DNA of 64,000 bases from Mobula hypostoma (lineage: Eukaryota). The notes below the pieces were generated by a model. It was not told the origin of the DNA, ran no database searches, and saw only the letters and a program-made list of their open reading frames with translations. Below, piece by piece: positions 1,128-36,497 of the stretch (position 1 is the stretch's first letter; every line of letters starts with the position of its first letter). A program made the position numbers and the translations under genes. The stretch lies in NCBI RefSeq assembly GCF_963921235.1, contig NC_086104.1, forward strand, positions 148,924,001-148,988,000, read 5' to 3'.

Positions 1128-1803
1128 CAGTGGATTCCGGTTAATTAGGACACATCAGGACCAGTACATTTTGGCCCAATCAAATGGGTGCCCTAATTAA
1201 CTGAAGTTTCATGGAAATAGTTAAAAAGGTATAAAAAAGACAAACTACTGTTTAACTGAGTAACTAATTATGTAATTAAATGAAATACAGAACAAATTAG
1301 AACACTACCAATACTACTATAGAAGTGTACTAGTTCCTAATACAGTAGTTATCAATGGAGTATTAACCAGGGTACATTGTCGTGCTCTTTTGATTGATTG
1401 TAATTGAACAAAATCAGCGCAGACACTTAAGTGCAGATAAATCTTTGCCTCTGCCTTCCTGCCTGAAGTAGTGTCATAATCCACCAATAAATTTCCTGGC
1501 ACAAAGTGATCAAAAATCATGATATTTTGAATCGGTGCCTTTTGGCCCAAATGGATAACACAAGTACATGCAACTGAAGCCATTTAAAAACTGTTCGCTG
1601 TAAGCACAGCATAGTTTCTAATGGCCACACAAGTGCTTGCTAGTTAGAAACTGTTCTACAAGTCTCCTGTTCCAATTAAGCAGTACAGTGTCCCAATTAA
1701 ACAAAGGCAACACCAGCTAATTTCTCGATTTGTTTTTGTTCTTTTTTGTCTCAAATAAACAGCTGCCCGATTAACCAATGGCCCAAATAACTGGAAGCCA
1801 CCG
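1128..1803. mobile_element. Non-autonomous Tigger/pogo-like (Tc1/mariner superfamily) DNA transposon
   Basis: Imperfect TIRs CAGTGGATTCCGGTTAATT / AATAACTGGAAGCCACCG with flanking TA; a second copy in opposite orientation ends at 61101. Confidence 0.75.
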
Positions 1804-2020
1804 TATATCCCAAGATCTCAATGTCTAAAAATTATAAAAACATTAATTAAAATCTTGCATCCCACAGTTTAAGAAATTATAGCATCAACTGCAATAATGA
1901 TTACAAGATAAAATTTACAGAATTCAGGTTTAAAATTTTCGTACATCTTAGTGTTCCTAATGATTGAAATTAATTACCATCTTATAGGAAATATATATTA
2001 AACCATTAAGTCATGACCCT

Positions 2021-7964: not shown

Positions 7965-10392
7965 ACCAACAGACAGCTCATGGCTCACCCGGACGGAGTG
8001 ATCATTGTAGCAGGGGACTTCAATCACACAGATTTTAAACTGGTCATGCCCAAACTTTACAAAAATGTGAATTTCCCGACACAAGAATATAACATACTAG
8101 ACCAAGTCTACACAAATATTCCAGGAGCATTCAAAGCGACCCCATCTGTACACCTAGGACAATCAGACCATATCTCCCTCACACTGACCCCAGCTTACAG
8201 ACCACCGATCTGCGGAGTAAAACCAACCATCAGGACAGTACATATGTGGTCTGAGGAAGCCACCTCAATGCTACAGGACTGTTTTGACAACACAGATTGG
8301 GGCTTGTTTGCAAAGGGAGCAGACCTGGAGAAATATGGTGGTTCAGTCCTAGGATAAATTAAGTTTTGCACAGAAAATGTAATCACACAAAAGACAATTA
8401 AGGTGCTTCCCAATCAAAAGCCATGGATTAACAGCAATGTGAGGGCACTACTCAGGGAGCGCGATGCAGCCTTCAGATCAGGAGACAAACAAGCCTACAG
8501 TGAAGCACAGGGGAATCTCCACAGGGGCATCAGGGATGCAAAGCGCAAATACAAATTGCGCATTGAAAATCGGTTTGATAACAACCACCCCCACAGTATG
8601 TCTGGCATCAAGGCGCTGACAGACTACAAATCCAATAATCTGCTGCCAGATGATGACGCCACACTGCCTGATGTCCTATACCAGTTCTTTGCCCGCTTTG
8701 ATACTCAGAGGGAGGAGGCTGCTCCACTCATCAACCTACCTGACGATGAGTCCACACTGGTCCTTAAGCAACACCAGGTGAGACCCACCCTGAGGAAAGT
8801 GAAGGCGAGTAAGGCAGCTGGCCCAGACGGAGTGCCCGGCCGGGTACTGAAAGCATGTGCTGACCAGCTTGCTGAGGTGTTTACAAGTATATTTAACCTC
8901 TCACTGCAACAAGCTGTTGTTTCAACATGCCTTAAAGCCTCCACTATCATCCCAGTGCCCAAAAAATCAGCTGTGAAGTGCCTGAATGACTATTGCCCTG
9001 TAGCACTGTCACCCACAGCCATGAAGTGCTTTGAGAGACTTGTGCTCTCACACATTGAGGCAATAATCCTACCTGATCTGGACAAACACCAGTCTGCCTA
9101 CCGGGCAAACCACTCCACAGAGGATGCAATCACAACAGCCATCCATATTGCTCTGACTCACTTAGAGGAACCGAACACTTATGTGAGGATGTTATTTGTG
9201 GAATTCAGTTCTGTATTTAACATCGTCATCCCCCATAAACTGGTCAGCAAACTGAACACTCTTGGCCTTGGTTCCCCCCGTGCTCATGGATCACGGACTT
9301 TCTCACAGACCGACCACAGCAAGTTAGAATTGGTAAGCACAGCTCTAACACCCTCATCTTAAAAATAGGCACCCTGCAGGGCTGTGTGCTGAGCCCTATG
9401 TTCTACACACTCTTCACACATGACTGCACCCCCATCTACACCTCCAACTCCATAATTAAATTTGCGGACGATACCACAGTGGTTGGCCTGATCTCGGACG
9501 AGGATGAAACAGCCTCCAGGCTTGAGGTGGATCATCTGACGGAGTGATGTAAGGACAATGACCTGGTCCTTAACACTTCTAAAACAAAAGAGATGATCAT
9601 TGACTTCAGGAGATCAAAGGACAGAGTACACACCCCCTCCATATACATGGAGAGGTAGTGCAAAGTGTGGAAAACCTAAAGTTCCTTGGAGTTATGTTGT
9701 CAAAACAGCTGCCATGGACCACCAACACCTCGCTGCTTGTAAAAAAAGGCACAACAAAGACTCTTCTTCTTCAGAAAGCTGAAACAGGCCAAATTTCCAC
9801 AAAAGCTGTTGCTTAACTTCTACAGGAGCACAATTGAAACCATCCTGACCGACAACGCCACAGTGTGGTATGCCAGCAGCACAGCCGCTGAGCGACAAGA
9901 CCTGCATCGTGTGGTGAAGGCGGCCCAGTGAATTGTCAGGATGGAGCTCCCAGGACTGGACACCATCTATTCCAGCAGACTCAGGAGGAAAGCAATCAGC
10001 ATAACCAGAGACACCACACACCCCCGCCACTCCCTGTTTGACCCGCTGCCGTCCAGCAAAAGGTTCAGGACACTAAAAGCCAGAACAAATAGACTGAGGA
10101 ACAGCTTCTATCCCAGAGCTGTGGCCTCCATCACACCACTCCCACAGGACAATGACTGAAACTGTGAGCACACACATGTACACACAAGGACTCAAATACT
10201 TGCACTAACGGCACTCTGTGCATTACTGTGATATTCTGGCACTGCTGCAACTTATTTTCTGCTACTTATCTATTTAATACTGCTTTTCTATTACTGTCTT
10301 GATTTTATCTACCGCTTTATTTAATTGCCTGAGAGGAAGCCAAACAGAGTTTCATTGTACCTATGTATAATGACAATAAAGGTCATTCAATT
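7965..10392 (+). mobile_element. Decayed Rex1/Babar-like LINE (AP endonuclease end, RT, DUF1891-type C-terminus)
   Basis: AGDFNH, LGQSDH, PNQKPW, KAAGPDGVPGRVLKACADQLA, FADD, KEMIIDFRR, HP.HSLF..LPS.KR..RNSFYP; frameshifts; AATAAA 3' tail. Confidence 0.88.
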
Positions 10393-11829: not shown

Positions 11830-13140
11830 ACATACAAAGGGTGTCCATGTACGTCAGCCTATGAAAGTAAGTATGCGGTTAAGGTGGCAAATGGTATATT
11901 AACTTTTATTGCACAGGTTTTGAAAACAAAAGTTAAGATGAATTTTACCCATGTATGTGAAGGATGTGAGAAATAATGTCAAGTCAAGTCAAGTCAATTA
12001 CCCAGGGCATCGGTGATGCCAACCTGCAGCACCTGGTGTAGTTTTAGTTTCCTTACTCAAGGGACATACTTGTCATAGGAGTGCAACAAAGTATCACCAG
12101 ACTGGTTCACAGGATGGCAGTATTGTCTGAAAGAGGATATGTTACCCACTCCACTACTAATAGATTTCAGAAAAAAATGAGAGCAGATCTCATCGAAACT
12201 TACAGAATTCTGACAGGGCTCAACAGACCCAATACACAAGGGATCTTTCCTGTAAGAGGGGTGTGTGCCGGAACCAAAGTTAGAATCTCAGGACAGGGTC
12301 AAGGCATTTGGGAGTGAGAAGAGGACAAATTTCTTCAGTGTGAAACTCCCCAACACTGGAGACTGGGGAAGCCAAGACAATAGAGATACTTAAGGTGCAG
12401 GTATACAGATTTCTAGATATTAAAACTTCAAAAAGTTATGGGAAAAGAGCAGTAAGACTTTAAGACATATGAGCTGATTTAGGCCATTCAGCCCATTGAG
12501 CCTGCTCTGCCATTCCATCTAATTTATTATCCTTCTCAACCTATTTTCTTGCCTTCTCCTCATAACCTTTGACGCCTTCACTAATCAAGAATCTAACAAC
12601 CTCCGGTTTTAATATAGCCAAAGATTTGGCCATCACAGCCGTATGTGGCAAAAAAATCCACAAATTCACTGCATTTGGGCTAAAGATGTTTCTCCTCATC
12701 TTTGTTCTAAAAGGACCACCTTCTACTGAGGTTGTGTCCTCTGGTCCTAGATTCCCTCACTATTGGAAACATCCACTCCACATCCAGTTTATTTTGACCT
12801 TTCAATATTGTATGTTTCAATGAGATTTATGCCACCCCCCCCATCATCTCATTCATCTAAACTCCAGCAAGTACATGCCCACGACCATCAAACGGTCCTC
12901 ATACATTAACTCTTTCATTCTCAGGATCATACTCGTAAAGTTACGGAGCCTCTCCAATGCCAGTGCATCCTTTTTTAGATATGGAGCCCAAAACTGCACA
13001 CAGTACACCAAATGTGGCCTGACCAATGCCTGAGAGAGCCTCAGTACATTCTTGCTTTTATATTTCAGTCCTCTTGAAATGAATGGCAACGTTGCATTTG
13101 ACTTCCTTTCTACTGACTCAACCTGCCAAATTAACCTTTA
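11830..13140. mobile_element. Two decayed CR1 3' fragments in opposite orientation
   Basis: LVRPHLVYCVQFWAPYLKKD (minus strand) and RADLIETYRIL (plus strand) CR1 ORF2 C-terminal motifs. Confidence 0.75.
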
Positions 13141-13691
13141 GGGAAGTGGGTCCCAATATGGCAAGGGGTCCATGGCATAAAAAATGTTGGGAACCCTTGC
13201 TTTAGGGAATCAGCAAGAATGTGGTATTGATCATGTTGAATGGTGGAACAGTCTCAAAAGGCCAGAGTGGCCTTTTACTACTCTTTGTGCCAACTTCTGA
13301 TAAAAGTGTTGCCTGAAAGTTACAAAGATTTAAAAAACGCTACTGTGTACCACATTTCCTGGTCTTTCATACCTGAATAGTAGTCTACTTAACTCATGCC
13401 CATTAACAGCATGTTCAAGTCTTCAGTCATCCAGCGATACCTCCAACCACTAACACAGATGTCCCCAACAGTTGACATTACAGCAGCATGGTTACAAACC
13501 ATCTAACCAAGTATATTAGATTTGCAAACTAAGTAATATTTTATTGCTTATGCAATTAGCAGCAGTCTTCCAGATACCATTTTGTAGTACCTTTATGAAG
13601 TCATCGTTTGCTATTCCTAGTTGTGAATCCCTCGTGGCTTCAGTTCAGAGAACTGGCAGTTAGTGTAACTCAGTCAGTGTCTGAAGGATGC

Positions 13692-14536
13692 TCAAGGACG
13701 CCTGCCTCGAAGAGCTCGACCTCGAGGGGATCTGACTGCCACCTGCAGATTCAATGGTGCTTCTGGAGGAGATGGGGCTTCGGAAGATGGGGAGGGATCA
13801 TACGTGCTGTTACCCCGAGAGAGGCTAGCAAGAGACACTCCAGCTGGCCCACTCACATGGGGCTGTGACTCCATGCCGCCATTGAGCTGTGGCAGAGCAG
13901 ACTGCAGAAGGTCTGAGATGTGACCGAACCCCCTATCAATACGCCCGCCCAACCTTTCCAAACTAGTGGAAATGGTGCAAGCCAGAGCCTGAATAGCACT
14001 TGTTTGAGCCTCAATCAGTGACGCCAAAGTTGGTGCCACAGGCTCATGGACAGAGGGCTTCATTGCTGCATCGACAGAGTTGGCAACTCGCTCCATGGTA
14101 GACTGGAGGGTGGTGATACCTTGTGCCACAACCCCACAAAAGATGGATGCAGACTCTTCTACACTCTCAGACAGCGTGAGGCAGCTCTTTGGCAGTTTGT
14201 CCAAAGCTTGGAGCAACTGATGATGCTCCTGGAAAATCTTTCTTCTAAAGGCTGGGCCTGTGAGATCTGCATCTTTGTCCTCTTCGATACAGCTAGGACC
14301 AGAGGTTGCCCTGGAGTCATCGGTCTCCTGGATGGTCCTTTCCACTATGTCCAGCTCCTGTTCATTACTACTGAATAATTCATTATGTGAAGATCCATTT
14401 AGCTGACCGTCCATTCCACTGGAGATGTTTAGGTCAGTGCTGATGTAGTGGAAAGATGGGGCTGGTGACTGTGCATCTTCTGTGAAATGCTCCTCTTCCA
14501 TCTCCTGTCCAATAAAGCCTAGGTAATGAGTCAGAT
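13692..14536 (-). CDS. Myb/SANT-like protein, exon 3 (acidic linker plus helical C-terminal region)
   Basis: Strong ctccctctttttcag acceptor in phase 1 matching exon 2; about 280 open codons in otherwise stop-rich DNA; minus-strand AATAAA at 13545-13540. Confidence 0.82.
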
Positions 14537-14666
14537 CTGAAAAAGAGGGAGACAAGATTGGTGAGTCCTGGGATGGTAAAGTAAGAACAGTACATGAACA
14601 TCTCTAGGGTGATTACTCAGTCTGTGTGACGACTGAAAAGAGTAGGTAAGAGAAATAGGAATGCAC

Positions 14667-14826
14667 CCTGTGGTACTTGGCCTCCGGCCTTGCCATTCTC
14701 AATGTTTCTCCTGCTGTTTGGCCCAATGATGTCCAGGGCTTCCTGCTCCATCTGGGTGAGATCTAGAATAGATGCTGGGCGTTCCCCGCAACTGGTTCTT
14801 TTCCTTGTTTTGTGGGCCAACTTCTC
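14667..14826 (-). CDS. Myb/SANT-like protein, exon 2
   Basis: tttctacag acceptor, phase 0; EKLAHKTRKRTSCGERPASILDLTQMEQEALDIIG continues the typical post-Myb motif (EK.AH..R.R..TGGG....LT..E...L.I.G); weak donor G|GTGCAT, phase 1. Confidence 0.8.
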
Positions 14827-15244
14827 CTGTAGAAATAGTGAGAGTGAGTTAGTGCTTCATTGTTATAATGCATGACGGAGACGTGCGAACCAGCTGCATG
14901 CAGGAGGCGGGGATGTAGCCAGTTAACAGCCATGTTTATTGGTTTTGTGTAGAAAATGAAGGGCTTCAATTTATTTATTATCCTTAGCATTATTTCTAAA
15001 GTAGAGTCACTGCTGTAATGCAGGAAATGTTGTGGCCAACTTGCATAAAACATAATGCTTCCACGAAAATATATGACAGTGACTATATTACTTTTCTTCT
15101 ACGGGATATTGACCATACAGGAGATGTGAAAAGTTTTCCAGGTTTTAATCACTGCTCATGTCTAATTCTGAGGGCTTTCATCCAGGCTTACCTGTGTAAG
15201 CGGATACCTTGCTTACAGTTTATAAATTTGAGTTCAACCAAACA

Positions 15245-15345
15245 ACCTTGATCCCTACACCTCCTTCCTCACCACAACTCAAGGTTCCAAACAGTCCTTC
15301 CAGGTGAGGCAACACTTCACCTGCGTATCTGTCAGGTCATTTCTC
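15245..15345 (+). mobile_element. Penelope-like element GIY-YIG region fragment
   Basis: Translates to PYTSFLTTTQGSKQSFQVRQHFTCVS, typical of the segment preceding the GIY motif. Confidence 0.6.
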
Positions 15346-15399
15346 TGCAGTGCTTCTCGGCTTTTCTGCTCATGGCCCACTTGAGACTATCATTTACCT

Positions 15400-15960
15400 C
15401 TGCGGTCGCCACCCTCCAATGTCTCCATTAGTTGCGAAGGTTTTTTTTGTCAACTGTACTATTTATTGTAATCTACAGACAATATTTATGTCTTAACAGG
15501 TTATCAGTGTTACTACATGTTAAATATAGTGTTGCAGGTGTGTATGAAAAATAAAACTATTTCAAAGTTCTAAATACAATAGTTCACTTATAATATATAA
15601 TAAAACTATAACCAGCAATTAATATTGGCGATTAATATTGTTACATTGGGTATTTAGTGAGATCCTTGCCACAGATGCAAACTAGTGAGTTTTTGAATAT
15701 CTGGTTGGAACTTGGTTAGAGATAACCAAAGATCACATCTTTTCACAACATCAAGATGGTTACAAGCTTTTGAACGCAGTTGAAGAGCTTGACTAAAACC
15801 ACATTCAACTAGATAAGAGGTGGGAAATCCAATTAAAAACTTGGCTTTCTCGCAAAGCTGTGGAAACAGTAGATATTCAAAAACGTTGCTTGCTGTGTTT
15901 CAATTTTGCTTGAGCATTTTATCACTCTGCAACTCAATAAGACATTCTTGCAACGTGATG
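15400..15960 (-). mobile_element. hAT (Charlie/Buster-like) transposon 3' remnant
   Basis: Minus-strand translation FPTSYLVECGFS...CNHLDVVKRCDLWLSLTKFQPDIQKL..H..QGSH* resembles the hAT C-terminal dimerisation domain. Confidence 0.75.
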
Positions 15961-17094
15961 ACAACATCATTCACATTATATATACCGGTATATATAGCCG
16001 GAGAGGAGATATATCTCTACCAAAGGAGGTACAAGCACTCCTTCCCTCCATAAGCCTGCAGGTCACCCATGGGCAAGGTGTAGCACCTGCTTAGCCCCCC
16101 CTGATCAGGGCCACGTGAAGCCATGGGAGCAGATGGTGGATGGTCATATGAGCAGCTGGTGCAGATCACGAGTCCTGATTATGCGACCACTGATGTATAA
16201 CAGTAACAACCATGACACCAAACTAGGTAGAGAGACCTACTTTAGAGTGAGTAGGCTCTATAGAAAATCAGTAAAAGTCAAAGAATTATTATAAGTAGAA
16301 TCCCACGTGAAAAAGTACCAGTATTGAATAAACATGTAAAAATAAAACCAGCTTTTTAGGCAATACTTTTAAAAAATTATTTATTTATTGGGCATTTTTT
16401 TAAAATCCTATTATATATTCAAGTCCTATATGGCAATAAGGAGCATGCACTAACCAGGAAGAGTGATTTGAACTTCCTTTCAAAATAATACGTAACAGGG
16501 ATTTAATAGAAGTTGTAATGGTATAGTGATGCAGTGGTAGAATGTGTGAAGTCTCACCTCTTTGCAGTTCAGCTATTTCTGGCCGAGGACCCCACTGCAG
16601 CCTTCATGTCATGTTTTGTAAGTAATATAACATGCACAGGTCGGTGGAAGGCAAATGGAACCAGCCTCTTGTTATATACTTGCTCAGTGGGGCAAAGAGC
16701 AGATCTGCAGTTGTGGATGTGCAACAGGACTCAGCGGGCCGCCCTGCAGGGTGTGAACAGTGATTTGTGCGTGGTCAAGCAGGAGAGAGCGAATGATATG
16801 CCGCACCCCACCCCCCCACACACACAGCTAAGCTATTTTGCTGCCTCATTTGCAGCATCTAGCACATCTTATTTCATCCAATTAAATTACATATACTCAT
16901 TTCTTTTTTATGTATATATTTTAGTAATCTTTCAATAAAACAGTAAACTTATCATGGCCTATTCAGAAACTTCTGTGGCTCCCAGTTTCTTTGTAACCAT
17001 GACAAAATCTGGCATGGCCCCCTGGGGGACCCAATGGCTTACACTGAGCATCACTGGTCTACAGTATCTAGTGTTGCCTCCTCTGCATTGGTGA

Positions 17095-17680
17095 GATCTG
17101 ATGCTTCTCAAAAGGAAGGATCTCCAGGTGGCCACCCATTTCAATATGTCTGTCCATGACCTCCTCGACTCCCACGATCAGTCCATACTCAGGTTGGTGG
17201 AGCATCACCTCATGTTCCATATGGATAGCCTCTAACCTGATGGCATGAAGATTGATTTCTCTAACTTTCAGTAATTCCCCCCCACCTCTCCTTGTCCGTT
17301 CCCTATTCTGGCTCTCCTCTTTTCTTCACATGCCCTCTGCTGCCCTTTCTCCTTCTCTTTCTCCCATGATCCACCCTTCTCTCCTATCAGATTCATTCTT
17401 CAGCCCTTCACCTCTTCTCCCTATCACCTTCTTGCTCCTTACTTCAGCCCTCCCACCCCAGTTGATCTCACCTAGCACCTGCCAGCTTGTACTCCTTCCC
17501 CTCCCCACACCTTCTTATTCTGGCCTCTGTCTCTTTCCTTTCCAATCCTGATAAAGGGTCTCAGCCAAAATGGTGACTGTTTGTTCCTCGTCATAGATGC
17601 TGCTTGATTTACTGAGTTCCTCCAGCATTTTCTAAGTGTTGCTCTAGATTGTCATCATCTGCAGAATCTCATGTTTAGAT
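17095..17680 (+). mobile_element. Penelope-like element 3' fragment with degenerate hammerhead
   Basis: VATHFN..LRLVEHHLMFHMDSL*PDGMKIDFSNF C-terminus, CT-rich tract, then CTGATAAAGGGTCTCAGCC and the same tail as the hairpin elements. Confidence 0.75.
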
Positions 17681-17881
17681 TTGTATCTTTCCCAGACAAA
17701 TCTGTTTCCCATTCAACAAAATCTCCCTGACTTGCCAAGTGTTTCCAGCATTTTCCATATTTCCTTACAACACTGAAACAATTTGGCCCATTACCCTCTG
17801 TTGGCTGCCAGTGCAGTCCCATCAACCCCATTCCCCCACATTTCCTTGTAACTCTCTCACACGCCCACCAGTTCTCCCCAA

Positions 17882-18538
17882 TAGTCATAGCCATACTTTA
17901 TTGATCCTGGGGAAAATTGGTTTTTGTTACAGTTACACCATAAATAATAAATAGTAATAGAACCATAAATAGTTAAATAGTAGTATGTAAATTACGCCAG
18001 TAAATTATGAAATAAGTCCAGGACCAGCCTATTGGCTCAGGGTGTCTGCCCCTCCAAGGGAGGAGTTGTAAAGTTTGATGGCCACAGGCAGGAATGACTT
18101 CCTATGACACTCTGTGCTGCATCTCGGTGGAATGAGTCTCTGGCTGAATGTACTCCTGTGCCCACCCAGTACATTATGTAGTGGATGGGAGACATTGACC
18201 AAGATGGCATGCAACTTAGACAGCATCCTCTTTTCAGACACCACCGTCAGAGAGTCCAGTTCCATCCCCACAACATCACTGGCCTTACGAATGAGTTTGT
18301 TGATTCTGTTGGTGTCTGCTACCCTCAGCCTGCTGCCCCAGCACACAACAGCAAACATGATAGCATTGGCCACCACAGACTCGTAGAACATCCTCAGCAT
18401 TGTCCGGCAGATGTTAAAGGACCTCAGTCTCCTCAGGAAATAGAGACGGCTCTGTCCCTTCTTGTAGACAGTCTCAGTGTTCTTTGACCAGTCCAGTTTA
18501 TTGTCAATTCGCATCCCCAGGTACTTGTAATCCTCCAG
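17882..18538 (-). mobile_element. 5'-truncated Rex1/Babar-like LINE
   Basis: Open ORF end KKGQSRLYFLRRLRSFNI..HPLH..RKSFLPVAIKLYN; short-repeat 3' tail. Confidence 0.85.
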
Positions 18539-18775
18539 CTTACATTATTCCTAATGTATGGGATAATAGCTAATTATCCCATACATTAGGAATAATGTAA
18601 GATAGCCAATTAATAATCCACTGGCCATCTGGAAGGAAAGCAAAGCACACAGGAAGAACATGGAAGCTGCATACAGACACCGGAGATTAGGACTGAACCC
18701 ATTTTGCAACAGATATCAGTCAAGAGATTTACCTGTATAGCTGTGCCACCCCATCCACACCAACTTCTAAAAGGG

Positions 18776-19105
18776 CAGGGCAGTACAGTAGCATAGTAGT
18801 TGGCACATCACCTTGTAGTGCTAGGGACCACTGATTCAATCCTGTTGCTGTCTGTAAGGCGTTTGTACATGCTCCCTGTGACCGCGTGCATTTCTTCTGG
18901 GTGATCCAGTTTCCTCCCATATTCCAAACATGTACAGTTGATAATAGGGTTAATGAGTTTTGGGAATACTATGTTGGCACTGGAAGCATGGGGACACTTG
19001 TGGGCTGCCCCCAGCTTAATCCTTGGACGATGTTGATTGTTGATGCAAAATGATGCCTTTCACTGTGTTTTGATATACGTGTGACAAATAAAGCTCACCT
19101 TATCT
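18776..19105 (+). mobile_element. tRNA-derived SINE (V-domain/HE1-like)
   Basis: Degenerate A/B boxes, V-domain-like tttcttctgggtgatccagtttcctcccatattccaaa, LINE-like tail; related minus-strand copies near 4010-4275, 25270-25965 and 39350-39745. Confidence 0.6.
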
Positions 19106-19812
19106 TACCCTTAACCCATGCCGCATAAAATCTAGTTACACATTATGCACAGTGATTCATAGTGATTGCTGGGTTAGCAAAATCCCAGTTTAAAAATTCT
19201 CATCTTTATTTTCATACGCTGCATGGCTTCACCCCACTCCCCAAGCTACAATCTCTAAACTATCTGCACTCATTAATACTGTCCTCTTAAACGGTCATGC
19301 AGATGGGAAAGACGTCATTCAGTCCTACTTGTCTATGCGCACCAAGATTCTCACTACTTGACAATTATTGAATTTAATCACTCCACCTATTTCACCACAA
19401 GACCATAAGACATAGGAGCAGAATGCGGCTATTTGGTCCAGTTATTCTGCTCCACTATTTCATCATGGCTGATCCATTTTCCTTCTCAGCCCCAATCTTC
19501 AACCTTCTCCCCATATCTCTTCACGCCCTGACTAATCAAGAATTTATCAACCTCTGCCTGAAATATACCCAAAGACTAGGCCTCCATAGCCACCTGTGGC
19601 AATGAATTTCGCAGATTCACCCACCACTGTCTGGCTAAAGAAATTCTTCCTCATCTCCACTCTAAAAGGACACCCCTCTATTCTGAGGCGGTGTCCTCTG
19701 GTTCTAGACACTCTCACCATAGGAAACATCCTCTCCACAGTCACTCTATTACATTCACATACCAAGGTCAAAATACCATGACTTATGCTTTCAAACACGT
19801 CCAGCTTTTTTA

Positions 19813-20000
19813 GTCTTGACGAAGGGTCTCGGCCTGAAACGTCGACTGCGCCTCTTCCTATAGATGCTGCTTGGCCTGCTGCGTTCACCAGCAACTTTGA
19901 AGTTAGTCCTGACGAAGGGTCTCGGCCTGAAACGTCGACTGCGCCTCTTCCTATAGATGCTGCTTGGCCTGCTGCGTTCACCAGCAACTTTGCTGTATGT
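19813..20000 (+). mobile_element. Tandem dimer (93-nt period) of a Penelope-derived unit carrying minimal type I hammerhead motifs
   Basis: Two near-identical units; 13-bp duplication TCCAGCTTTTTTA at 19800-19812 and 20001-20013. Confidence 0.8.
19905..19940 (+). ncRNA. Minimal type I hammerhead ribozyme motif (intact core)
   Basis: AGUC-CUGACGA-AGG(GUCUCGG)CCU-GAAA-CGUC/GACU: stem I AGUC/GACU, stem II AGG/CCU, palindromic ACGU in place of stem III, GUC cleavage triplet. Confidence 0.7.
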
Positions 20001-20422
20001 TCCAGCTTTTTTACTTCTCTCTTAAGAAGCTCTTTAAACCCCATCTATTGGTAAATTGATTTAATTGCTCTTATTGTTCACAGAAACATTTTATTTGATA
20101 TCCTTCCTGGGATGTTTTTCTCCAGCAAAGATGCTGAAAGATTTGAAAAGTCAAAACTTTTTCTTTACAGAAGGAAAGCTTGACAGAAATGTATAACATG
20201 ATGAGGGGTTTACACAGAGTGGATAGCAAGCAGCTGGTCCCACTGGAAAGTGCGAAGGATTAAAGGCCACAGGTGAAATATTAAGGGAAAGTGAATTAAG
20301 AGTGACACAAAGAAAACCGTTAAAAAAATCAGCATGTGGCTGTAATCTGAAATGTACTGCCTGCAGATGTAGTGGAAGGAGATTCCATTCTGGCCTTCAA
20401 GAAGGAAGGAATTAAATAAATA

Positions 20423-21374
20423 TACTCAGTGCCAACTTTATTGGGTGCACCTGCTCATTAATGCAAATATCTAATCAGCTAATCACATGGCAGCAACTCA
20501 ATGCATAAAAGCATGCAGACATGGTCAAGAGGTTGAGTTATCTTTATAATATCTGGAAGGAAGTGGGATGGTCAAGGAATGCAGGAGGGAGGAGGTGAGA
20601 TTGAGGTTTGGGCACACAGGGTTAAATAATACATTATTTTTAATGAAGAAATACAGTAACAAATATTGTAATCAACAAGATACAGTTGAGTATATTCTGG
20701 TGAGGTGCCCAAGAGAGGATGGTTGATTTTAAAGTTATCACAGAATAAAACACAACTTAACATTAACAATATTTTGCAGAAAGGATCGCAGGATTGTTGC
20801 TTTAAATATACAGCGCAGTTCCTTAAGAATACAGGTCTTTTATAGAATTTGACAGATATACAAATATATAACGTTTAGATATCCTGACCCATATTCCAGT
20901 TCAGAAGGTGGCGGAAATGCACCACAAAGCTGTTTGTCAACCGCCATAAAACCTCAGGAGGAGAGGTTCATTTGCTGTCCAGACCAAACATCAGAATGGG
21001 GAATAAATCTGATCCAAGTGACTTTGACCGTGGAATGAGTGTTGGTGCCAGACAAGGAGGTTTGAGTATCTCAAACCGCTGACACCCCCTGGGATTTTCA
21101 TGCACGACAGTCTCTAGAGTTTACAGAGAATGGTGCAATAAACAAAAAAAAAACATCCAGTGAGCGGCAGTTCTGTGGGTGAAAGCGTCTTGTCAATCAG
21201 AGGTCAAAGGGGAATAGCCAAATTGGTTCAAAGTGACTATGACTCAAATAACCACGACAGTGGTGTGCAGAAGAGCATCTCTGAATGCACATGTCGAACC
21301 TTGAAGTGGATGGTTACAGCACCAAAAGTCCATACCAGGTTGCACCCTGTATCTAATGAAGTGGCCACTGAGTG
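20423..21374 (+). mobile_element. Internally deleted Tc1-like transposon with unrelated internal insert
   Basis: TIRs (T/C)ACTCAGTG.C.ACTT.ATT, TA flanks; transposase N-terminal remnant MG.K.D.SDFDRGM.VGAR..GLSIS; another fragment on the minus strand at about 59185-59320. Confidence 0.78.
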
Positions 21375-22910
21375 TATATAGCAATGAAAACTTTGCAAGG
21401 CTAGAGAATGGAAAGGAATTGGTTAGACTGGAACTAGTGGAATGGTTTGGTAGAAAACCAGTGCAGAGATATTTGCCTGAATCACCTCCTAGGGCGCTGT
21501 AACTTTGATTCCATACAAATGCAGATTACTCTTCAACATATTTAATGTGGTACTTCACAGCAGACTTACAAGGAAAGCAAAGCCAATGCAAAAATGATGG
21601 CGTAGACACAGAAATTAGCCAAAGGATCAAAAAAGCAGATCTGAGGAGATTTGGTATGTCAACAGACACTTGAAAATTTCTACAGAAAGGGTTAAAGGTG
21701 ATATATTAAAACTGATTCTGAAAACCATAACAGTGGCTTTTCAGATTGTAAGGAAGGGCCCTTCCTCCAGATGAGTGACATCGGAGACTACCGATGACAA
21801 TGATAAACAACCAACTGGAGGAAATCCACGTGATCAAGCAGTAGGTATCAGAGAAAGGAACTGTTGGCCTTCCTGTTTGAAACCCTGCATCCAAACTAGC
21901 CCTGCAGCTAGCTTCAGCCTGAAATGTTCGCAGTTCCTGCTCCTGATGCAGCCTTTTGACCTGAAGCTTCAACAATTCCTTTTCTCCGACATATGCTGCT
22001 CAATCCGCTGAGTTCCTCCAACAGATTGCATGTCGTGCCTCCAGGGGTCATTTCCACCTCCCAAGACATGACCTGCAGGAAGAAGCAAGTTTAGCAGGCC
22101 AAGGGCAGGCTAAAATACTGGAGTATGCCCGAACACTTTGTTGGGGGGGGGGCGGGAAGCATATGGACCACAGCCATTTCTGACATGGACACATGCCTTT
22201 GTCATGATACAGGGGAAATCAGTTTTGTCATACCCTCTTCTTATGGTGAGGAGGTACAGGAGTCTGAAGACCATCAATGATTTAAGAACAGCTTCTTTCC
22301 CTCTGCTATCAGATTTCTTAAGACCACAAGACACAAAAACAGAATTAGGTTATTCAGTCCATTGAGTCTTCTCCACCATGTGCGAGTTGTTATCATCTCA
22401 ACTCCATTCTCCTGCTTTCTTTCTGCAACCTTTGACACCAAGAACCTCCACTTTAAATATACTCAATGACATGGCCTCCACAGCCATCCAGGGGAATGAA
22501 TTCCACAGATTCACTAGCCTCTGGCTAAAGAAATCCCTTCTCATATCTCATCCAAAGGGTTGTCCTTGTATTTTGAGCTGTGCCATGAACAGTAACTAAT
22601 TATTCTTTTTTTTGCTCTGTTTCGTTACTAACATCAGGCAGGAGGTACAGAAGCCTGACAAACAATGATTCAGGAACAGCTCCTTCCCCTCTATGAACCC
22701 AAGAACACACCTCATTATTTCTTTCTGTAGAACTATTTTGCAATGTATAGTGATGTTACGACTTTGAACTGCATTGCAGCCGCAGAACAGACTTCACATC
22801 ATGAGAGAGACAGTGATAATGAACCTGATTCTGAAACCTGCCAACACAAGGACTGGTGACTGGTTGGAGCAGAGTGGCTGGGGGCGAACTCCTGCTGCCA
22901 CCATGCTTAC

Positions 22911-23141
22911 CTTCGCAGTCCAGGTCAGGCCATTGAACTTCTTGCGGCACTGCAGCCAAGTCTTTGGCACCTCACTCTTGGCATTAACACAGTGTGCCAC
23001 CTCCATCCAGGCCTGGTGCACCTTCTCCCTGGGCACACTCCTGCCCTCGGAGGGGAAAAATATCTCCCTGCGAGCCCTCACCTGCTCCAGCAGAACCTGC
23101 ACTGCTCTATCGCTGAAGCGCGGGGTCCGAGGCTCCGACAT
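22911..23141 (-). CDS. Myb/SANT-like DNA-binding domain protein (MSANTD/NAIF1/MYPOP-like, Harbinger-derived), exon 1
   Basis: MSEPRTPRFSDRAVQVLLEQVRARREIFF...AWMEVAHCVNA..VPKTWLQCRKKFNGL fits the Myb_DNA-bind_5/trihelix pattern (F-S-x-E/A..LL, W..IA..VN, R/KT..QC+KK(W/F)xDL); 77 codons then AAG|GTAAGC donor, phase 0. Confidence 0.88.
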
Positions 23142-23460
23142 GCCGGCGAGAAACAAAACCCGAACCCGGGGCAGGCTGAAGGGGGAAAGGTGTTGGGGGA
23201 ATATGAGGAGGCTGGAAATTCGTCGTCGGGCGGTCGGCCGGAAACACCCACCCTCCGGCCAGCCCGTCCCTCATCGGACATTCACACACATATATGGCCC
23301 CGCCGGCCAATGGAGACCCAGAACTTCCTGTCCATCATAGGGAGCGCAGCTAATCGGAGAAGCGGACTGACGAGGACCCGCCCACGCCGGCCCGATGTGC
23401 GCCCGCACTAAAATTGGCATCGCAAGATGGCGGCGGTGAGGGTCCCTGGCCGAGGGATGT
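23142..23460. promoter_or_regulatory. CpG island promoter, probably bidirectional
   Basis: High CpG density, CCAAT in both orientations (about 23307 and 23413), ETS ACTTCCTG (about 23323), GC box CCGCCC, YY1 motif CAAGATGGCGGC 23423-23434, plus-strand donor GTGAGG at 23436. Confidence 0.75.
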
Positions 23461-25441
23461 AGGCTGGTATTGAGCGAATTAAAGGCTTTCAGAATCAGAA
23501 TCACGTTTAACATCACCTGCACATATCGTGAAATTGGTTGTTTCTGCGGCAGCAGTACAATGCGATACATAATAGCTGGAAAAACTGAATTACAGTAAAT
23601 GCATCTATCTATGGGAATAGAAATTTAAAAAACGTAGTTAGGTAGTGTTCATTGGTTGTAATATCCATTCAAAGATCGGATGGCAGAGGGGAAGAAGCTG
23701 TTCCTGAATTGTTGAGTGTGTGCCTTCACGAACAGGACATGTCCTGGATGATGGGAGGTATTAATGATGGATGCTGACTTTTTGAGAGATCGCTCATTGA
23801 AGATGACCATCTCTCAGGTTAAAAATTGTGCATTTTCCGCTGATGGGGTAGCCGCTTGCGAAGGAAGCTGAGGGACGAAAGTATCGAGGGAAAGAGGAGT
23901 TGTAAAGTGGAGGAAATAAGATAGGGAGAAGGGGAGTGAAGGGGTTAGAGGGGACAGGGACAGTAGAAGGTGGGGACAGGGACAGTAGAAGGTGGAGAAC
24001 GGGTAGGTAGGAGAGGAGACTGGAGTAGAACCTTGTAGAAAGATTAGGGGTGGAGAGAAAAGAAGAAAAGGGGAATTGAATAGAATAACAGGGGAAAGAA
24101 AGGTAATGTTAGTGATATAAGACATTATACCGTGTGCTGAATAAATATTGAAACACTTGTAGGAAAGCAGCATACATCATCAGAGATCCATGCCACCAAG
24201 GCCATTCTCTTTTCTCGCTGCTACCATCAGGTAGAAGGTACAAGAGCCCCAGGACTCGCACCACCTGGTCCAAGAACAGTTACTACCCCTCAATCATTAC
24301 ACTCTTGAACAAAGGGGTTAACTCTACGCATTTGCCCAACTATTGAGATATTCCCACAACCAATGATCTTACTTTAAGCACTCTTTATCTTGTTATTTCA
24401 TGTTCTCGCTATTTATTTATATTTGCATTAGCAGTTTGCTGTCTTCTGCACTATAGATGATCTTCTTCATTGATCCTGTCATAGTTACTATTCTATCAAT
24501 TTGCTGAGTATGCCCGCAGGAAAATTTATCCCAAGGTTGTATGTAGTGATGTATATGTTCCCTGATAATAAAATTTACTTTGTACACAACTAATATAAAC
24601 TGATATATTTTAAGAACATTTAAAACAACTAAATCACTAACAACAACTTTTAATTCTTACTTTTAAACTGCATGCAAAACAATCACAAAATGTGCACATG
24701 ATACCAGCAAACTGTTGTTATTATTACTACCTGAAACTCTAAGCACATAATTTGCATTTTTGTCATCTTTTAATATGAATACTTACTTCAATGCAAGTAA
24801 CTGACTATAATAGAAAAAAGTCCCCTTAAAAATAAGTGGCATCTAGAAGGACAGACTATCCCTGGGTTTAACGTTGCCTCTTGAAGCCGATAACTTGAAA
24901 CACTTGCTCAGCAGAACACTACAGTGCCAACTAATATTCTTGTTTTTCGGTGTTTGGGAGTGGAATGTAGCATCACTGCCTTTTTAACCATACACACTAT
25001 AATTTGTGGCTGTTTATTGTTAGATACATGACCCCTTTCAGAGTTTTCATTGATCAAATGCTCCAGTTCTTCAGCTGAATGTGCACTTCATGCCTGTGTA
25101 AATATAAAAGCTAATCATCTTCAGCTCTTTTTCCATGGCATGGCTCATTGGATCAGAGTTTGGGTGATATCGATGTGTTTATAATGTCCTGGTCCAAATA
25201 TCCAAATACAAGCCCCTACTACATACAGGTACAGAGCTATTTTGATGCCCTTGGTCTTTTGAACAGGAAATATTAGCTTTATTTGCCACCTGTACATCAA
25301 AACATCAATACAGTGAATTGTGTCATTTGCGTGAACAACCAACACAGTCCAAGGATGTGCTTGGGGCAGCTTGCAATTCTCACCATGCTTCCAGCGCCAA
25401 CATTGCAACTTTCTAACCGGTACATCTTTGGACTGTGGGAG

Positions 25442-33640: not shown

Positions 33641-36497
33641 CGCTGTTGTTGACACAAAATTATGTGGGGTATAGATGGGGTAAATGCAAGCGATCTTTTC
33701 CCAGAGAATGGGCAAGACTTAAACCAGAGGTTATAAGTTAAGGGTGAAAGGTGAAATATTTAGGGGGAACTGCTTCACTCAGAGGGTAGTGCAAGTTTGG
33801 AGTGAGCTGCCAGCTAAGTGGTGGAAGCAGGTTCGATTGCAACATTTAAGAAACGTTTGTAAAGTATATGGAGGAGAGGGGAATGGAGGGCGATGGTCCA
33901 GGTGCAGGTTGCTGGAACTAGGCAGAATAACGGTTCGGAATTGACTAGACGGGTTGTGGTGATATCACGTGTAAGAACGTGATTGGACAGAGTTCGGAGC
34001 ATACGCAGAAATGACAGAATGATCTAGAATGTTAAAAACGTGGTTGCTGTTGCAAATAAAAGTTCTAGTTTTAATTCTTCCAGATTATGGTTTGTTCTTA
34101 CTAACCCACGGTACGTATAAAGAACACAACACAGGATGAGGGATCTGTTTGTGCTGTAGCAGTCTAAAACACCAACTGTGGTTCTTCGCTGCCAAGGCAG
34201 TACAACTGCCATCACAGGAAGATGCTGATGTCATTTGTTTTGGTAAGTGGTTCAATGTGTGGGGTAGTTCTACTATACTAACACATCCAAGTCTGAAATT
34301 GTCATTAAGATTTATATTTTTATAAAGTTCAAACTAAATTTAATATCAAAGTACATATACTGACCTGATACTCATTTTCTTGTAGGCATTCACAGTAAAT
34401 GCAAAGAAACACAATAGAATCAATGAAAAACCACACATAATGAAGATGGACAAACAACCGATGTGCAATAGACAACAAATTGCAAATACAAAAATAATAA
34501 ATAAATAAGCAATAAGTATCAAGAACATAAGTTGTGAGTTCTTAAAAGTGAGTCCATACTGTGGAATCAGTTGAGTGTCGGGGTGAGTAAAGTTACCCCC
34601 TCTGGTTCAAAAGCCTGATGGTCGATGGGTAATAGCTGTTCCTGAACCTGGTGGAGTGGGATGATGATTTTACAATAAATTCCATAGATATTGCTTTGCC
34701 TCATTTGCATTCTCTAAATACATCAGATAGGATTTCGTCTCACTGTTAATGTTGTGGGTTCTTGTTTGTGGCATTGGGAATGCCATTTTCCCATTAATTT
34801 CCAAAGGTTGATTTCAGACTAACCAACCCAAGTAGGTACACCACTGAATTCAAAGTCAGTTCTTCCAAGGCAATCTCTGGGGATCTATCACAGATGGGGA
34901 ATGGGTGTCCAGTGGGATGGGTAGTGTGTAATTTGTGGGGTTCACAGGTCTATTCTGTGCTCCTGCCACATGACTTCCACATTCTCAGTGCCACCCGAGC
35001 ACTGCTCCCTGCAAGCTGTGCAAGAGTGTGGCTACGTAGTAGCCGAAGTGCTCCCACGTACCTAGACTTTGTGCCGTGTAGCTAGAAAATGTTTACGAAA
35101 TGTTTGTTTGTTGTATTGCATTTTTGATGGATTCTAGATCATGGTCTCTGGGGACTTTGCTATTAGTTGCATAGAGGGTGGTGGGGTTGATGCTGTTGCT
35201 GGAGCAATTGGGGAGGGGAGGGATGTTGCATTTGCTGCTGCTTGAGCATGGGAGGGGGTGGCTTCGGGGCTCTAACATTTTTTTCTGTCATTCATCCTTT
35301 GAGGTCTTGTTTCATGGATGTCTGTGAAGAGTAAGAATTTCAGATTGTATACTGTATATATTCTGATATTAAATTGAACTATTGAACCCTTTAATTAATA
35401 AATAAAACCAAAAGTATGTGATTTTCATTCTGAATATCCATAGTATGCATATTACAAAACAAAAAAAAATTAAAGTGCTGTGCAGTTTTCAGAACATGTA
35501 AAAATTTCCTGCTCAGAGCAATGGTTGGTCCACGCAGCTGTAAAAAAAAAGTAGTGAGTGTGTTTACTGCAATACTGTAAGTTGAAGTGGATTATGAGAA
35601 AATATTTCGTGTATTTAATCTGCAGTGCGAATATTTTATTCTAAATTGTTTTTTAATCAGCTTTTAGAAAAAGATGGATTAATAAAGTAAACACTTAGAA
35701 GGAAAATACATTTGATTAATCTCTTTAATAAAATAATAAGGGTGGTGGCATTGTGGTACAAAAAGCTTTCAACAGGCATCTACCATTTAAAAGCTAAATC
35801 AAGTCCAATTTCGTCAAGCATTAGAGTAAGGAAATGAAAGATTGAATAAGGGACCAAACCAGTAAAGGGGGCAAAATTACACTGTCTTCAAGATTCAGTT
35901 ATTTGCAAGGTCAAGTGTCTTTTTTATTTCAATCTATCTACCAGGTCTTTTTTTCCCCCAACATGTTGAAGCCTAACCACTAATAGAAAATTTTTCCTTA
36001 ATACTCTCGTATTGTGAAGTGGGAAATAGCTGCTCAAGTGATAAAATTCCAATTTATATATACTAGCCTGCAGGTCACCCTTGTGACATGAAGCCATGAG
36101 AGCAGGTGGGGACAGTTGTATGAGCAGCTGGTGCATATCCCAAGTCCTGGTTGCGCTACTACTGACTCCAGGCAGACAATCTCTGGAGAGTATTGATGAT
36201 GGCTGGGGTGTCCTGTCTTGCAAATGACAATCCACTTCTATAGAAATATCTGCAAACAATCATTGTCATGGGAAGACCATGATTGCTTATACGACACAGC
36301 ACATAACAAAAGAATGCCTCAAAATTATGAGTTTTCATTACAAGGCCTAGACTCAGGTAATCAGTATAAAAAAGATTCAACACACATCGGCAACTTTGAT
36401 GTGTGTTGCTTGAATTTCCAGCATCTGCAGAATTCCTCGTGTTTACATTTTTAAAGAAGATTCAATCTCCTTTTATTTTAATGTTTCCCTTGTCACT

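What the first reader, a model, noticed from the sequence alone, without database searches (positions are those of the whole stretch)
13540..23300. Candidate domesticated PIF/Harbinger Myb/SANT gene, apparently without a partner transposase
Seen: three phase-compatible exons (23141-22911, 14826-14667, 14536-13692) give an uninterrupted ORF of about 411 aa, with a polyA signal, a CpG-island promoter and an 8-kb first intron full of old decayed TEs. I saw no TIRs or DDE transposase nearby. Established: Harbinger transposons encode a Myb/SANT DNA-binding partner of the transposase, and such genes were domesticated repeatedly (NAIF1/HARBI1 in vertebrates; ALP1/ALP2 and HDP1/HDP2 chromatin regulators in plants). 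Inference: the N-terminus looks closer to chondrichthyan Harbinger Myb ORFs than to NAIF1 or MYPOP. An intact ORF among decayed intronic TEs points to purifying selection, so this may be an independent, lineage-specific domestication producing a new transcription or chromatin factor that could recruit a Harbinger-derived nuclease encoded elsewhere.
Basis: partly seen in the sequence, partly recalled or inferred. Interest (0 to 1): 0.75.

Follow-up and report, generated by a model that had tools for sequence, protein, structure and literature searches.

The report
Elasmobranch gene domesticated from Harbinger Myb
This is a real, spliced and selectively maintained three-exon gene of sharks and rays, descended from the DNA-binding helper gene of a Harbinger transposon; it is a clean new example of a known kind of event (transposon gene domestication), not a new kind of system.

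Summary
Three minus-strand exons (23141-22911, 14826-14667, 14536-13692) with GT..AG introns join into a 411-aa ORF. Exon 1 is a Pfam Myb_DNA-bind_5 domain. Contigs from four public runs skip intron 2 exactly.

Full-length orthologues exist in rays, skates and sharks (60-98% identity) with the same exon structure. The locus is collinear with a skate locus, including an upstream NUDIX gene. dN/dS is about 0.2, and about 0.1 in the Myb and C-terminal domains.

The gene is paralogue "A" of an elasmobranch-only trio (A, B, C), each present in both sharks and batoids. A profile of the non-Myb part found only elasmobranch proteins among 1.8 billion representatives.

The decisive result concerns a distant family member in the shark Heptranchias. 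It lies tail-to-tail, 310 bp from a DDE_Tnp_4 (Harbinger) transposase ORF. It is 29% identical to the window protein over about 340 residues and has identical intron positions and phases, including a 160-nt exon 2. Its copies evolve nearly neutrally (dN/dS 0.71).

No transposase lies in the window. MYPOP, MSANTD4 and NAIF1 are the closest known proteins, but only by architecture (13-18% identity).

This is a new member of a known kind. The biochemical role (DNA-binding adaptor) is inferred. Another first-stage note (s1-143046, unchecked) reports a similar Myb/SANT gene elsewhere in this genome.

The parts
23142..23600 (-). Promoter and 5' UTR region: short CpG-rich stretch
   Evidence: CpG o/e 0.98-1.04 at 23200-23599. 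Nucleotide conservation with the Amblyraja locus extends to 23436, 75% identity. The transcription start was not mapped.
22911..23141 (-). Coding exon 1 (codons 1-77): Myb/SANT-like trihelix DNA-binding domain
   Evidence: Pfam PF13873 Myb_DNA-bind_5, E 2.4e-12. AF2 pLDDT above 90. dN/dS 0.09-0.12 against orthologues. A GTAAGC donor follows.
14827..22910 (-). Intron 1 (8.1 kb, phase 0), repeat-rich
   Evidence: GT..AG ends. High-copy repeat segments at 15128-15495, 16048-16231 and 17152-17500. The intron position is shared with skate, sharks and the transposon-borne relative.
14667..14826 (-). Coding exon 2 (160 nt; codons 78-130 plus 1 nt): basic stretch and a conserved short helix (T-Q-M-E-Q-E-A-L-D-I-I)
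   Evidence: The helix at residues 102-111 has pLDDT about 90. Exon 2 of the Harbinger-borne gene in L003 is also exactly 160 nt.
14537..14666 (-). Intron 2 (130 nt, phase 1)
   Evidence: Skipped exactly (14536|14667, CT..AC on the + strand) by contigs of runs X1, X3, X5 and X7.
13692..14536 (-). Coding exon 3 (codons 131-411 plus stop): acidic disordered linker, conserved two-helix C-terminal domain (residues about 223-345), variable basic tail
   Evidence: dN/dS is 0.10-0.15 in the C-domain and 0.4-1.1 in the tail. A profile of this part hits only elasmobranch proteins.
12000..13691 (-). 3' UTR (minimum extent); AATAAA at 13545-13540
   Evidence: Overlapping contigs of similar depth run from exon 3 down to 12000 and beyond the laid stretch. 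The sequence is conserved with skate to 13214. Hexamers are listed. The true 3' end was not determined.

Best explanation
The locus is a host gene, paralogue A of an elasmobranch-specific A/B/C family. It arose by molecular domestication of the Myb-like (second) ORF of a PIF/Harbinger DNA transposon before sharks and batoids diverged.

The gene kept the transposon gene's three-exon structure and its whole protein architecture: an N-terminal Myb/SANT trihelix, a short conserved helix, an acidic disordered linker and a C-terminal two-helix domain. It lost the transposase. It has since been held at a fixed locus next to a NUDIX gene under purifying selection.

Inferred mechanism: by analogy with Harbinger Myb-like proteins and NAIF1, it is a nuclear, sequence-specific DNA-binding adaptor. 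The Myb domain would bind DNA, possibly motifs related to Harbinger subterminal repeats. The conserved C-terminal helices would recruit a protein partner or mediate oligomerisation. An internal splice donor could produce a Myb-less isoform.

Shown: gene structure, conservation, selection, splicing, and kinship to a transposase-linked ORF. Inferred: DNA binding, nuclear location, and partner recruitment.
For: - ORF and splice sites. Myb_DNA-bind_5, E 2.4e-12.
- Full-length orthologues in rays, skates and sharks, with identical exon structure in Amblyraja, Heptranchias and Rhincodon.
- Collinearity with the skate locus at four anchors, including the NUDIX last exon.
- Omega 0.21-0.24 for A and 0.14 for B, with bootstrap intervals below 0.31. 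Two transposon copies give 0.71 (0.54-1.03).
- Contigs from four runs of three coded organisms skip intron 2 exactly.
- The C-domain profile hits only elasmobranch proteins among 1.84e9 representatives.
- In Heptranchias locus L003 the family member P0042 lies 310 bp tail-to-tail from ORFs carrying DDE_Tnp_4 (E 7e-17 and 2e-12), interrupted by one in-frame stop. A second, internally deleted copy with the same arrangement lies on another chromosome.
- P0042 against the window protein: BLASTP 29% identity over residues 1-339, E 1e-37. hhalign of the non-Myb part gives probability 98%, E 9e-14.
- Intron 1 is at the same K|E position in phase 0, and exon 2 is exactly 160 nt in both genes.
- In the tree, clades A, B and C each contain sharks and batoids. 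A+B+C has support 100/99, and its sister group contains the transposon-borne P0042.
- No transposase in the window or in the flanks of the orthologous loci.
- PMC9392472 and PMC9179366 state that Harbinger Myb-like proteins bind transposon DNA and the transposase, and that NAIF1 retains both activities.
Against: - No TIRs or target-site duplications were found for the L003 element. Its status as a mobile element therefore rests on the gene pair and a second dispersed copy.
- The tree is unrooted (midpoint only) and P0042 sits on a long branch. The direction of descent (transposon to host) is parsimony, not proof.
- Synteny was shown only between stingray and skate. Shark loci had no annotated neighbour within 10 kb.
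- No bona fide elasmobranch MYPOP sequence could be fetched for a joint phylogeny.
- DNA binding, nuclear localisation and any partner are untested. The homodimer prediction gave no verdict.
Confidence: 0.8

Rival explanations
1. The A/B/C genes are fast-evolving elasmobranch (co-)orthologues of MYPOP (p42POP), or of another jawed-vertebrate Myb_DNA-bind_5 gene. The domestication would then be the ancient gnathostome one, not an independent lineage-specific event.
For: Foldseek's best Swiss-Prot matches are MYPOP of human, mouse and Xenopus, E about 1e-6, spanning the whole length with the same Myb plus C-terminal helix architecture. NCBI names several family members 'MYPOP-like'. From memory (unverified), human MYPOP has a C-terminal helix motif that resembles the L-I-E-A-Q-T-x-A-I-Q-A-L stretch.
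Against: Identity to MYPOP is only 17%, no better than to MSANTD4 (16-18%) or NAIF1 (13-14%), against 29% to the transposon-borne shark ORF. A profile of the non-Myb part found no MYPOP or any non-elasmobranch protein at E<=1e-3 in 1.84e9 representatives. The full-length profile search found one outsider, a teleost match to the Myb domain only. Intron positions and exon 2 length are shared with the transposon gene. The flanking genes seen here (NUDIX, tectonic, histone) are not MYPOP's human neighbours (my own knowledge).
Confidence: 0.1
2. The direction is reversed. A pre-existing elasmobranch host gene was captured by a Harbinger transposon in the Heptranchias lineage, so the window gene is not transposon-derived.
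For: The tree is unrooted, and the transposon-borne copy is nested as sister to A/B/C, not basal to the whole family. No TIRs were found for the element.
Against: A Myb-like second ORF is a standard, required component of Harbinger elements (PMC9179366, PMC9392472). The L003 ORF occupies exactly that role and position beside the transposase. Many divergent, dispersed, partly truncated or fused family copies exist in shark genomes, which fits a transposon reservoir. Elephant shark, reported to lack Harbingers (PMC9179366), also lacks detectable family members.
Confidence: 0.06
3. The ORF is a decaying or neutral transposon relic, or an annotation artefact, that happens to remain open. It is not a functional host gene.
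For: It sits among repeats, and the C-terminal tail (residues 346-411) evolves nearly neutrally, omega 0.4-1.1.
Against: The ORF and splice sites are intact across orthologues with dS up to about 1.05. Omega is about 0.1 in both structured domains. The locus is collinear with skate. Spliced contigs occur in runs of three organisms. The true transposon copies give omega 0.71 and carry stops and deletions.
Confidence: 0.02

Closest known systems
Myb-like (second) ORF of PIF/Harbinger transposons (e.g. the reconstructed zebrafish Harbinger3_DR system)
   Same: Myb_DNA-bind_5 trihelix at the N-terminus. Direct sequence kinship to a shark ORF lying beside a DDE_Tnp_4 transposase: 29% identity, identical introns, and a shared non-Myb region.
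   Different: No transposase or TIRs at the locus. Fixed syntenic position. Purifying selection (omega 0.2 against 0.7 for transposon copies). 8-kb first intron.
MYPOP / p42POP (Myb-related transcription factor, partner of profilin)
   Same: Best structural match. Same order of Myb domain, disordered middle and C-terminal helices, and similar length (399 against 411 aa). MYPOP is itself listed as a putative Harbinger-derived gene (PMC9392472).
   Different: 17% identity. The C-domain profile does not detect it. No evidence of orthology. Profilin binding and leucine-zipper dimerisation are untested here.
NAIF1 (partner of the transposase-derived HARBI1)
   Same: A domesticated Harbinger Myb-like gene with a Myb_DNA-bind_5 domain and helical C-terminus. 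It is a functional precedent for retained DNA and transposase binding (PMC9392472, citing Sinzelle 2008).
   Different: 13-14% identity. NAIF1 is reported as a separate gene from cartilaginous fishes to mammals (PMC9392472). One distant subfamily member (P0052) is auto-named NAIF1, but it belongs to this elasmobranch family. No HARBI1 link was tested.
MSANTD4 / MSANTD3 / FSBP / TSNARE1 N-terminal domain
   Same: The same Pfam domain class and overall architecture. They were recovered by Foldseek at E 3e-6 to 5e-3. They are recurrent Harbinger Myb domestications in vertebrates (PMC9392472).
   Different: All are gnathostome- or sarcopterygian-wide genes. This family is detected only in elasmobranchs and has its own conserved C-domain.
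Plant ALP2/ALP1 and HDP2/HDP1 pairs
   Same: Domesticated Harbinger Myb-like proteins that act as DNA- or chromatin-targeting adaptors (PMC9392472, PMC5339849).
   Different: These are co-domesticated with a transposase-derived partner. No such partner has been identified here. They are unrelated lineages, and I made no sequence comparison.

Membership tests
Host genes domesticated from Harbinger Myb-like ORFs | Myb/SANT-like trihelix domain of the Harbinger type (Pfam Myb_DNA-bind_5) | tested here: met
   PF13873, E 2.4e-12, residues 5-76. Confident three-helix model.
Host genes domesticated from Harbinger Myb-like ORFs | Demonstrable homology to a Myb ORF carried by an element that also encodes a DDE_Tnp_4 transposase | tested here: met
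   P0042 in L003 lies beside DDE_Tnp_4 ORFs. BLASTP E 1e-37. hhalign probability 98% outside the Myb domain. Identical intron positions and phases. A second copy is in L007.
Host genes domesticated from Harbinger Myb-like ORFs | Fixed orthologous (syntenic) position in divergent species | tested here: met
   Stingray window and Amblyraja locus are collinear at the NUDIX exon, promoter and exon 1, exons 2-3, and a downstream block. Shark flanks were uninformative, so this is met for batoids only.
Host genes domesticated from Harbinger Myb-like ORFs | Purifying selection on the coding sequence | tested here: met
   NG86 omega 0.21-0.24, bootstrap 0.15-0.30. Myb and C-domain about 0.1.
Host genes domesticated from Harbinger Myb-like ORFs | Loss of mobility hallmarks (no transposase, no TIR/TSD, low copy number) | tested here: inconclusive
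   No transposase in the 64 kb, and a single copy in the window. TIRs and TSDs around the gene were not systematically searched. Genome-wide copy number was not testable.
Host genes domesticated from Harbinger Myb-like ORFs | Transcribed and spliced | tested here: met
   Contigs of four runs skip 14537-14666 exactly and continue beyond exon 2.
MYPOP orthogroup | Sequence orthology (clearly higher similarity to MYPOP than to other Myb_DNA-bind_5 genes, including in the C-terminal region) | tested here: not met
   17% identity, similar to MSANTD4 and NAIF1. The C-domain profile finds no MYPOP.
MYPOP orthogroup | Conserved synteny with MYPOP loci, and absence of a separate MYPOP in elasmobranchs | not tested
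NAIF1 orthogroup | Orthology to NAIF1 and interaction with HARBI1 | tested here: inconclusive
   13-14% identity. NAIF1 is reported as a separate gene in cartilaginous fishes (PMC9392472). HARBI1 interaction was not tested.
Autonomous Harbinger transposon copy | Transposase ORF plus Myb ORF between TIRs with a 3-bp TSD, in multiple similar copies | tested here: not met
   No DDE_Tnp_4 in the window. One copy only. The orthologous position is conserved.

The most novel reading that the evidence does not exclude
The A/B/C proteins may be an elasmobranch-specific regulatory module that still recognises Harbinger-derived subterminal motifs scattered through these repeat-rich genomes. It would work either as a repressor of its parent transposon family or as a transcription or chromatin factor wired to fossil Harbinger sites. 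It would use its conserved C-terminal helices to recruit a still unidentified partner, possibly a transposase-derived one. A conserved Myb-less splice isoform would act as a built-in antagonist.
Probability: 0.12. Interest if true: 0.65.

Novelty: new member of a known kind. Interest (0 to 1): 0.45.

Why it matters
Recurrent domestication of Harbinger Myb-like genes is documented in vertebrates (NAIF1, MSANTD1-4), insects and plants. For the ancient vertebrate cases, however, the donor transposon is long gone and similarity is confined to the Myb domain.

Here a lineage-restricted family can be tied to a surviving transposase-linked relative. The link runs across the whole protein and extends to intron positions and an identical exon length. 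That gives an unusually clear before-and-after pair for studying how a transposon accessory protein becomes a host factor.

The family also adds three conserved, uncharacterised putative DNA-binding factors to the small list of elasmobranch-specific genes. It does not reveal a new mechanism.

Tried and rejected
- Homodimer prediction of the C-domain (residues 218-348, two copies): no verdict, score 0.17 against a mark of 0.32, controls not run. This is not evidence either way.
- TIR search around the L003 element with two methods: nothing convincing.
- Foldseek against PDB: no match at E<=1e-3, only weak Myb-type DNA-binding domains.
- Profile search of PDB sequences: nothing.
- ESM Atlas feature search of the C-domain: all scores below 0.9, uninformative.
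- Word-indexed search with the Myb domain alone returned only family members.
- DNA for the Hemitrygon, Heterodontus, Carcharodon and Mustelus loci could not be fetched because the files or gene ranges were too large. dN/dS therefore rests on four species.
- The reading that the window holds a tandem A-B pair was rejected: only one copy is in the window.
- The reading that this is an active Harbinger copy was rejected.
- I did not type MYPOP or NAIF1 sequences from memory, so there is no joint phylogeny with them.


Full report
**1. The observation.**
Translating the three stated minus-strand segments and joining them gives 1236 nt, a 411-aa ORF plus stop.
- Exon 1 (23141-22911) ends in phase 0 and is followed by GTAAGC.
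- Exon 2 (14826-14667) is 160 nt. It is preceded by a polypyrimidine-CAG acceptor and followed by GTGCAT.
- Exon 3 (14536-13692) is preceded by TTTTTCAG.
- Exon 1 matches Pfam Myb_DNA-bind_5 (PF13873) at E 2.4e-12 over residues 5-76. Exon 3 matches no Pfam family.
- A CpG-rich stretch (observed/expected about 1) lies at 23200-23599.
- An AATAAA hexamer lies at 13545-13540 on the minus strand.

**2. Transcription.**
Contigs of four public runs (three coded organisms, three studies) were laid on 12000-17500. In each run one contig skips exactly 14537-14666, with ends CT..AC on the + strand, which is GT..AG on the gene's strand. Each such contig also carries 26-196 further letters beyond exon 2 that do not lie on the laid stretch, as expected if they belong to exon 1.

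Unique parts of intron 1 have little or no depth. Overlapping contigs of similar depth run downstream from the stop codon, through the AATAAA at 13540, to 12000 and beyond. The 3' UTR is therefore at least about 1.7 kb and contains repeats.

Three limits apply. The tool only guesses that these runs are RNA. Contigs show neither strand nor ends.

**3. Orthologues and paralogues.**
A search with exon 3 found 24 proteins, all from elasmobranchs. They include Hemitrygon (98% identity), Amblyraja (77%) and many sharks (56-68%). Most are about 410 aa with PF13873, and they are annotated 'uncharacterized protein' or 'MYPOP-like'.

Two N-terminal types recur in the same species, and both are linked on one contig or chromosome. 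The window is type A. In Rhincodon, A and B lie about 112 kb apart on opposite strands with a tectonic-family gene between them. In Heptranchias they lie about 41 kb apart.

A maximum-likelihood tree of 43 family members gives three starred clades, A, B and C. Each contains both sharks and batoids, and A+B+C is supported at 100/99. The duplications therefore pre-date the shark-batoid split, which I recall as roughly 270-300 My ago.

More distant conserved subfamilies also exist (the P0044 and P0075 groups, 26-30% identity), along with many divergent, truncated or fused copies, especially in Heptranchias.

**4. Taxonomic range.**
A profile of the non-Myb part (alignment A1, residues 78 to the end) was scored against 1.84 billion cluster representatives. 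It gave only 24 hits at E<=1e-3, and every one is elasmobranch.

A full-length profile in the word-indexed database gave 49 hits. Of these, 48 are elasmobranch. The other is a teleost (Alosa) protein that matches only the Myb domain.

No chimaera or bony-vertebrate protein carries the C-domain. A published survey also failed to find Harbinger elements in elephant shark (PMC9179366).

**5. Fixed locus and selection.**
The exon structure is identical in Amblyraja, Heptranchias (A and B) and Rhincodon (A and B): the same intron positions and phases, and an exon 2 of 159-162 coding nt plus the split codon.

The Amblyraja locus has a NUDIX-domain gene upstream on the same strand and a histone gene downstream. 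Window and skate are collinear at four anchors:
- the NUDIX last exon (window 36470-36829, 86% nt identity);
- promoter plus exon 1 (23436-22879);
- exon 2 to the proximal 3' UTR (14927-13214, 79%);
- a downstream block (1988-633).

Pairwise NG86 dN/dS for A is 0.21 (stingray-skate), 0.24 and 0.21 (stingray-sharks), with bootstrap intervals of 0.15-0.30. For B it is 0.14. By region it is about 0.09-0.17 in the Myb domain, 0.09-0.15 in residues 223-345, 0.18-0.56 in the linker, and 0.3-1.1 in the last 65 residues.

**6. The link to a Harbinger transposon.**
One distant family member, P0042 of Heptranchias (465 aa), was matched by the C-domain profile at E 1.6e-9 across its length. Its locus L003 was scanned for ORFs.

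On the opposite strand, 310 bp beyond its stop codon, lie two adjacent ORFs. They carry DDE_Tnp_4 profile positions 1-87 (E 7.4e-17) and 99-158 (E 2.2e-12). They are separated by a single in-frame TGA, where the conserved transposase motif leads one to expect a tryptophan (the expectation is my own knowledge of the motif).

This is the two-gene content of a Harbinger element. A second copy on another chromosome (L007) shares the 3' part of the Myb gene and the N-terminal part of the transposase in the same arrangement. It has an internal deletion and is 77-83% identical at the nucleotide level. I found no TIRs, so the ends of the element are undefined.

P0042 compares with the window protein as follows:
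- 29% identity over residues 1-339, BLASTP E 1e-37.
- The non-Myb regions align at hhalign probability 98%, E 9e-14.
- Intron 1 falls at the same K|E junction in phase 0, and exon 2 is exactly 160 nt with a phase-1 intron in both genes.
- In the tree, P0042 together with P0028 is sister to A+B+C. P0042 sits on a long branch and the tree is rooted only at the midpoint.
- The two transposon copies give dN/dS 0.71 (0.54-1.03), against about 0.2 for the host genes.

No transposase-like sequence occurs in the window or in the 10-kb flanks of the orthologous loci.

**7. Structure and comparison with known proteins.**
An AlphaFold2 model built with a 40-sequence alignment shows:
- a confident Myb trihelix (residues 10-88, pLDDT above 90);
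- a short conserved helix (residues 102-111);
- a disordered acidic linker (residues 114-217);
- two long helices (residues 225-289 and 298-344, pLDDT about 80);
- a disordered basic tail.

Foldseek against Swiss-Prot models returns MYPOP (17% identity, E 8e-7), MSANTD4 (16-18%), NAIF1 (13-14%), FSBP, MSANTD3, TSNARE1 and plant trihelix factors. These share the architecture, but none stands out as an orthologue. PDB searches by fold and by sequence gave nothing significant.

PMC9392472 describes NAIF1 and MSANTD1-4 as Harbinger Myb-derived. It says all of these except MSANTD3 are found from cartilaginous fishes to mammals, and it lists MYPOP and TSNARE1 as further candidates. It does not describe this family. 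Literature searches combining Harbinger, Myb and elasmobranch returned nothing.

**8. Mechanism (inferred).**
Harbinger Myb-like proteins bind subterminal transposon DNA and the transposase and enable its nuclear import. NAIF1 keeps DNA binding and binding to HARBI1 (as summarised in PMC9392472 and PMC9179366).

Selection here is strongest on the Myb domain and the C-terminal helices. The most likely function is therefore a nuclear DNA-binding adaptor whose C-domain contacts a protein partner or oligomerises. The acidic linker and basic stretches fit a transcription or chromatin factor.

None of this is shown. The single complex prediction (C-domain homodimer) gave no verdict.

**9. Verdict.**
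It is one of three old paralogues and is already present as an unnamed gene model, so it is a new member of a known kind.

Remaining doubts:
- formal exclusion of MYPOP co-orthology (about 10%);
- the direction of transfer between host and transposon (about 6%);
- all functional claims.

Noticed in passing
window 23076-23088 (minus strand; junction 23082|23081): A near-consensus 5' splice site (CAG|GTGAGG) lies inside exon 1 at codons 20/21. Using it with the exon 2 acceptor removes codons 21-77 in frame, which is the Myb domain. Such Myb-less isoforms (352-354 aa) are annotated in relatives of both paralogues (P0004 Pristiophorus A, P0011 Pristis B, P0018 Hemitrygon B). They could act as an antagonist isoform.
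   Followed up: partly
L004/L009 (Heptranchias), L006/L008 (Rhincodon), P0003/P0006 (Heterodontus): Paralogues A and B appear to undergo gene conversion in sharks but not in stingrays. Exon 3 of A against B is 89% identical in Heptranchias and 82% in Rhincodon (aa level), and the distal half is almost identical in Heterodontus. Between the window A and Hypanus B it is 56%. A-B dS in Heptranchias is 0.24, against about 0.75 between A orthologues.
   Followed up: partly
window 36470-36829 (minus strand): This is the last coding exon of a NUDIX-family gene, 86% nt identical to the end of the Amblyraja NUDIX gene (321-aa product) upstream of the Myb gene. That identity was not verified.
   Followed up: partly
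window 633-1988: Blocks conserved with skate (69-74% nt) lie about 12 kb downstream of the gene and are collinear with the Amblyraja locus. Both strands give tblastx hits, so the blocks are probably non-coding or UTR. Their nature is unknown.
   Followed up: no
window 12000-13691 and below: Run contigs chain from the stop codon through the AATAAA at 13540 to beyond 12000. One contig extends about 1.3 kb past the laid stretch. This is either a long repeat-bearing 3' UTR or an overlapping transcript. Strand and end are unknown.
   Followed up: partly
window 48252-50686 and 8403-9362 (plus strand): These are non-LTR retrotransposon ORFs: an endonuclease (Exo_endo_phos_2, E 3e-12) followed by RVT_1 fragments, plus a second RVT_1 fragment. 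The same element family recurs in the shark loci.
   Followed up: no
L003 533-2755 and 13999-14766: ORFs of Penelope-like elements (RVT_1 plus GIY-YIG) flank the Heptranchias Harbinger pair.
   Followed up: no
P0044/P0052 group and P0075 group; P0036: Two further subfamilies (26-30% identity to A) are very slowly evolving across sharks, with tree branches of about 0.02. They may be separate domestications. One member is auto-named 'NAIF1 isoform X1'. P0036 (Pristiophorus) carries three tandem Myb units before one C-domain.
   Followed up: no
L004 and L005 (Heptranchias): The A gene is present on two unplaced contigs whose coding sequences differ at 2 nt. They are probably haplotigs, not a recent duplication.
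   Followed up: no
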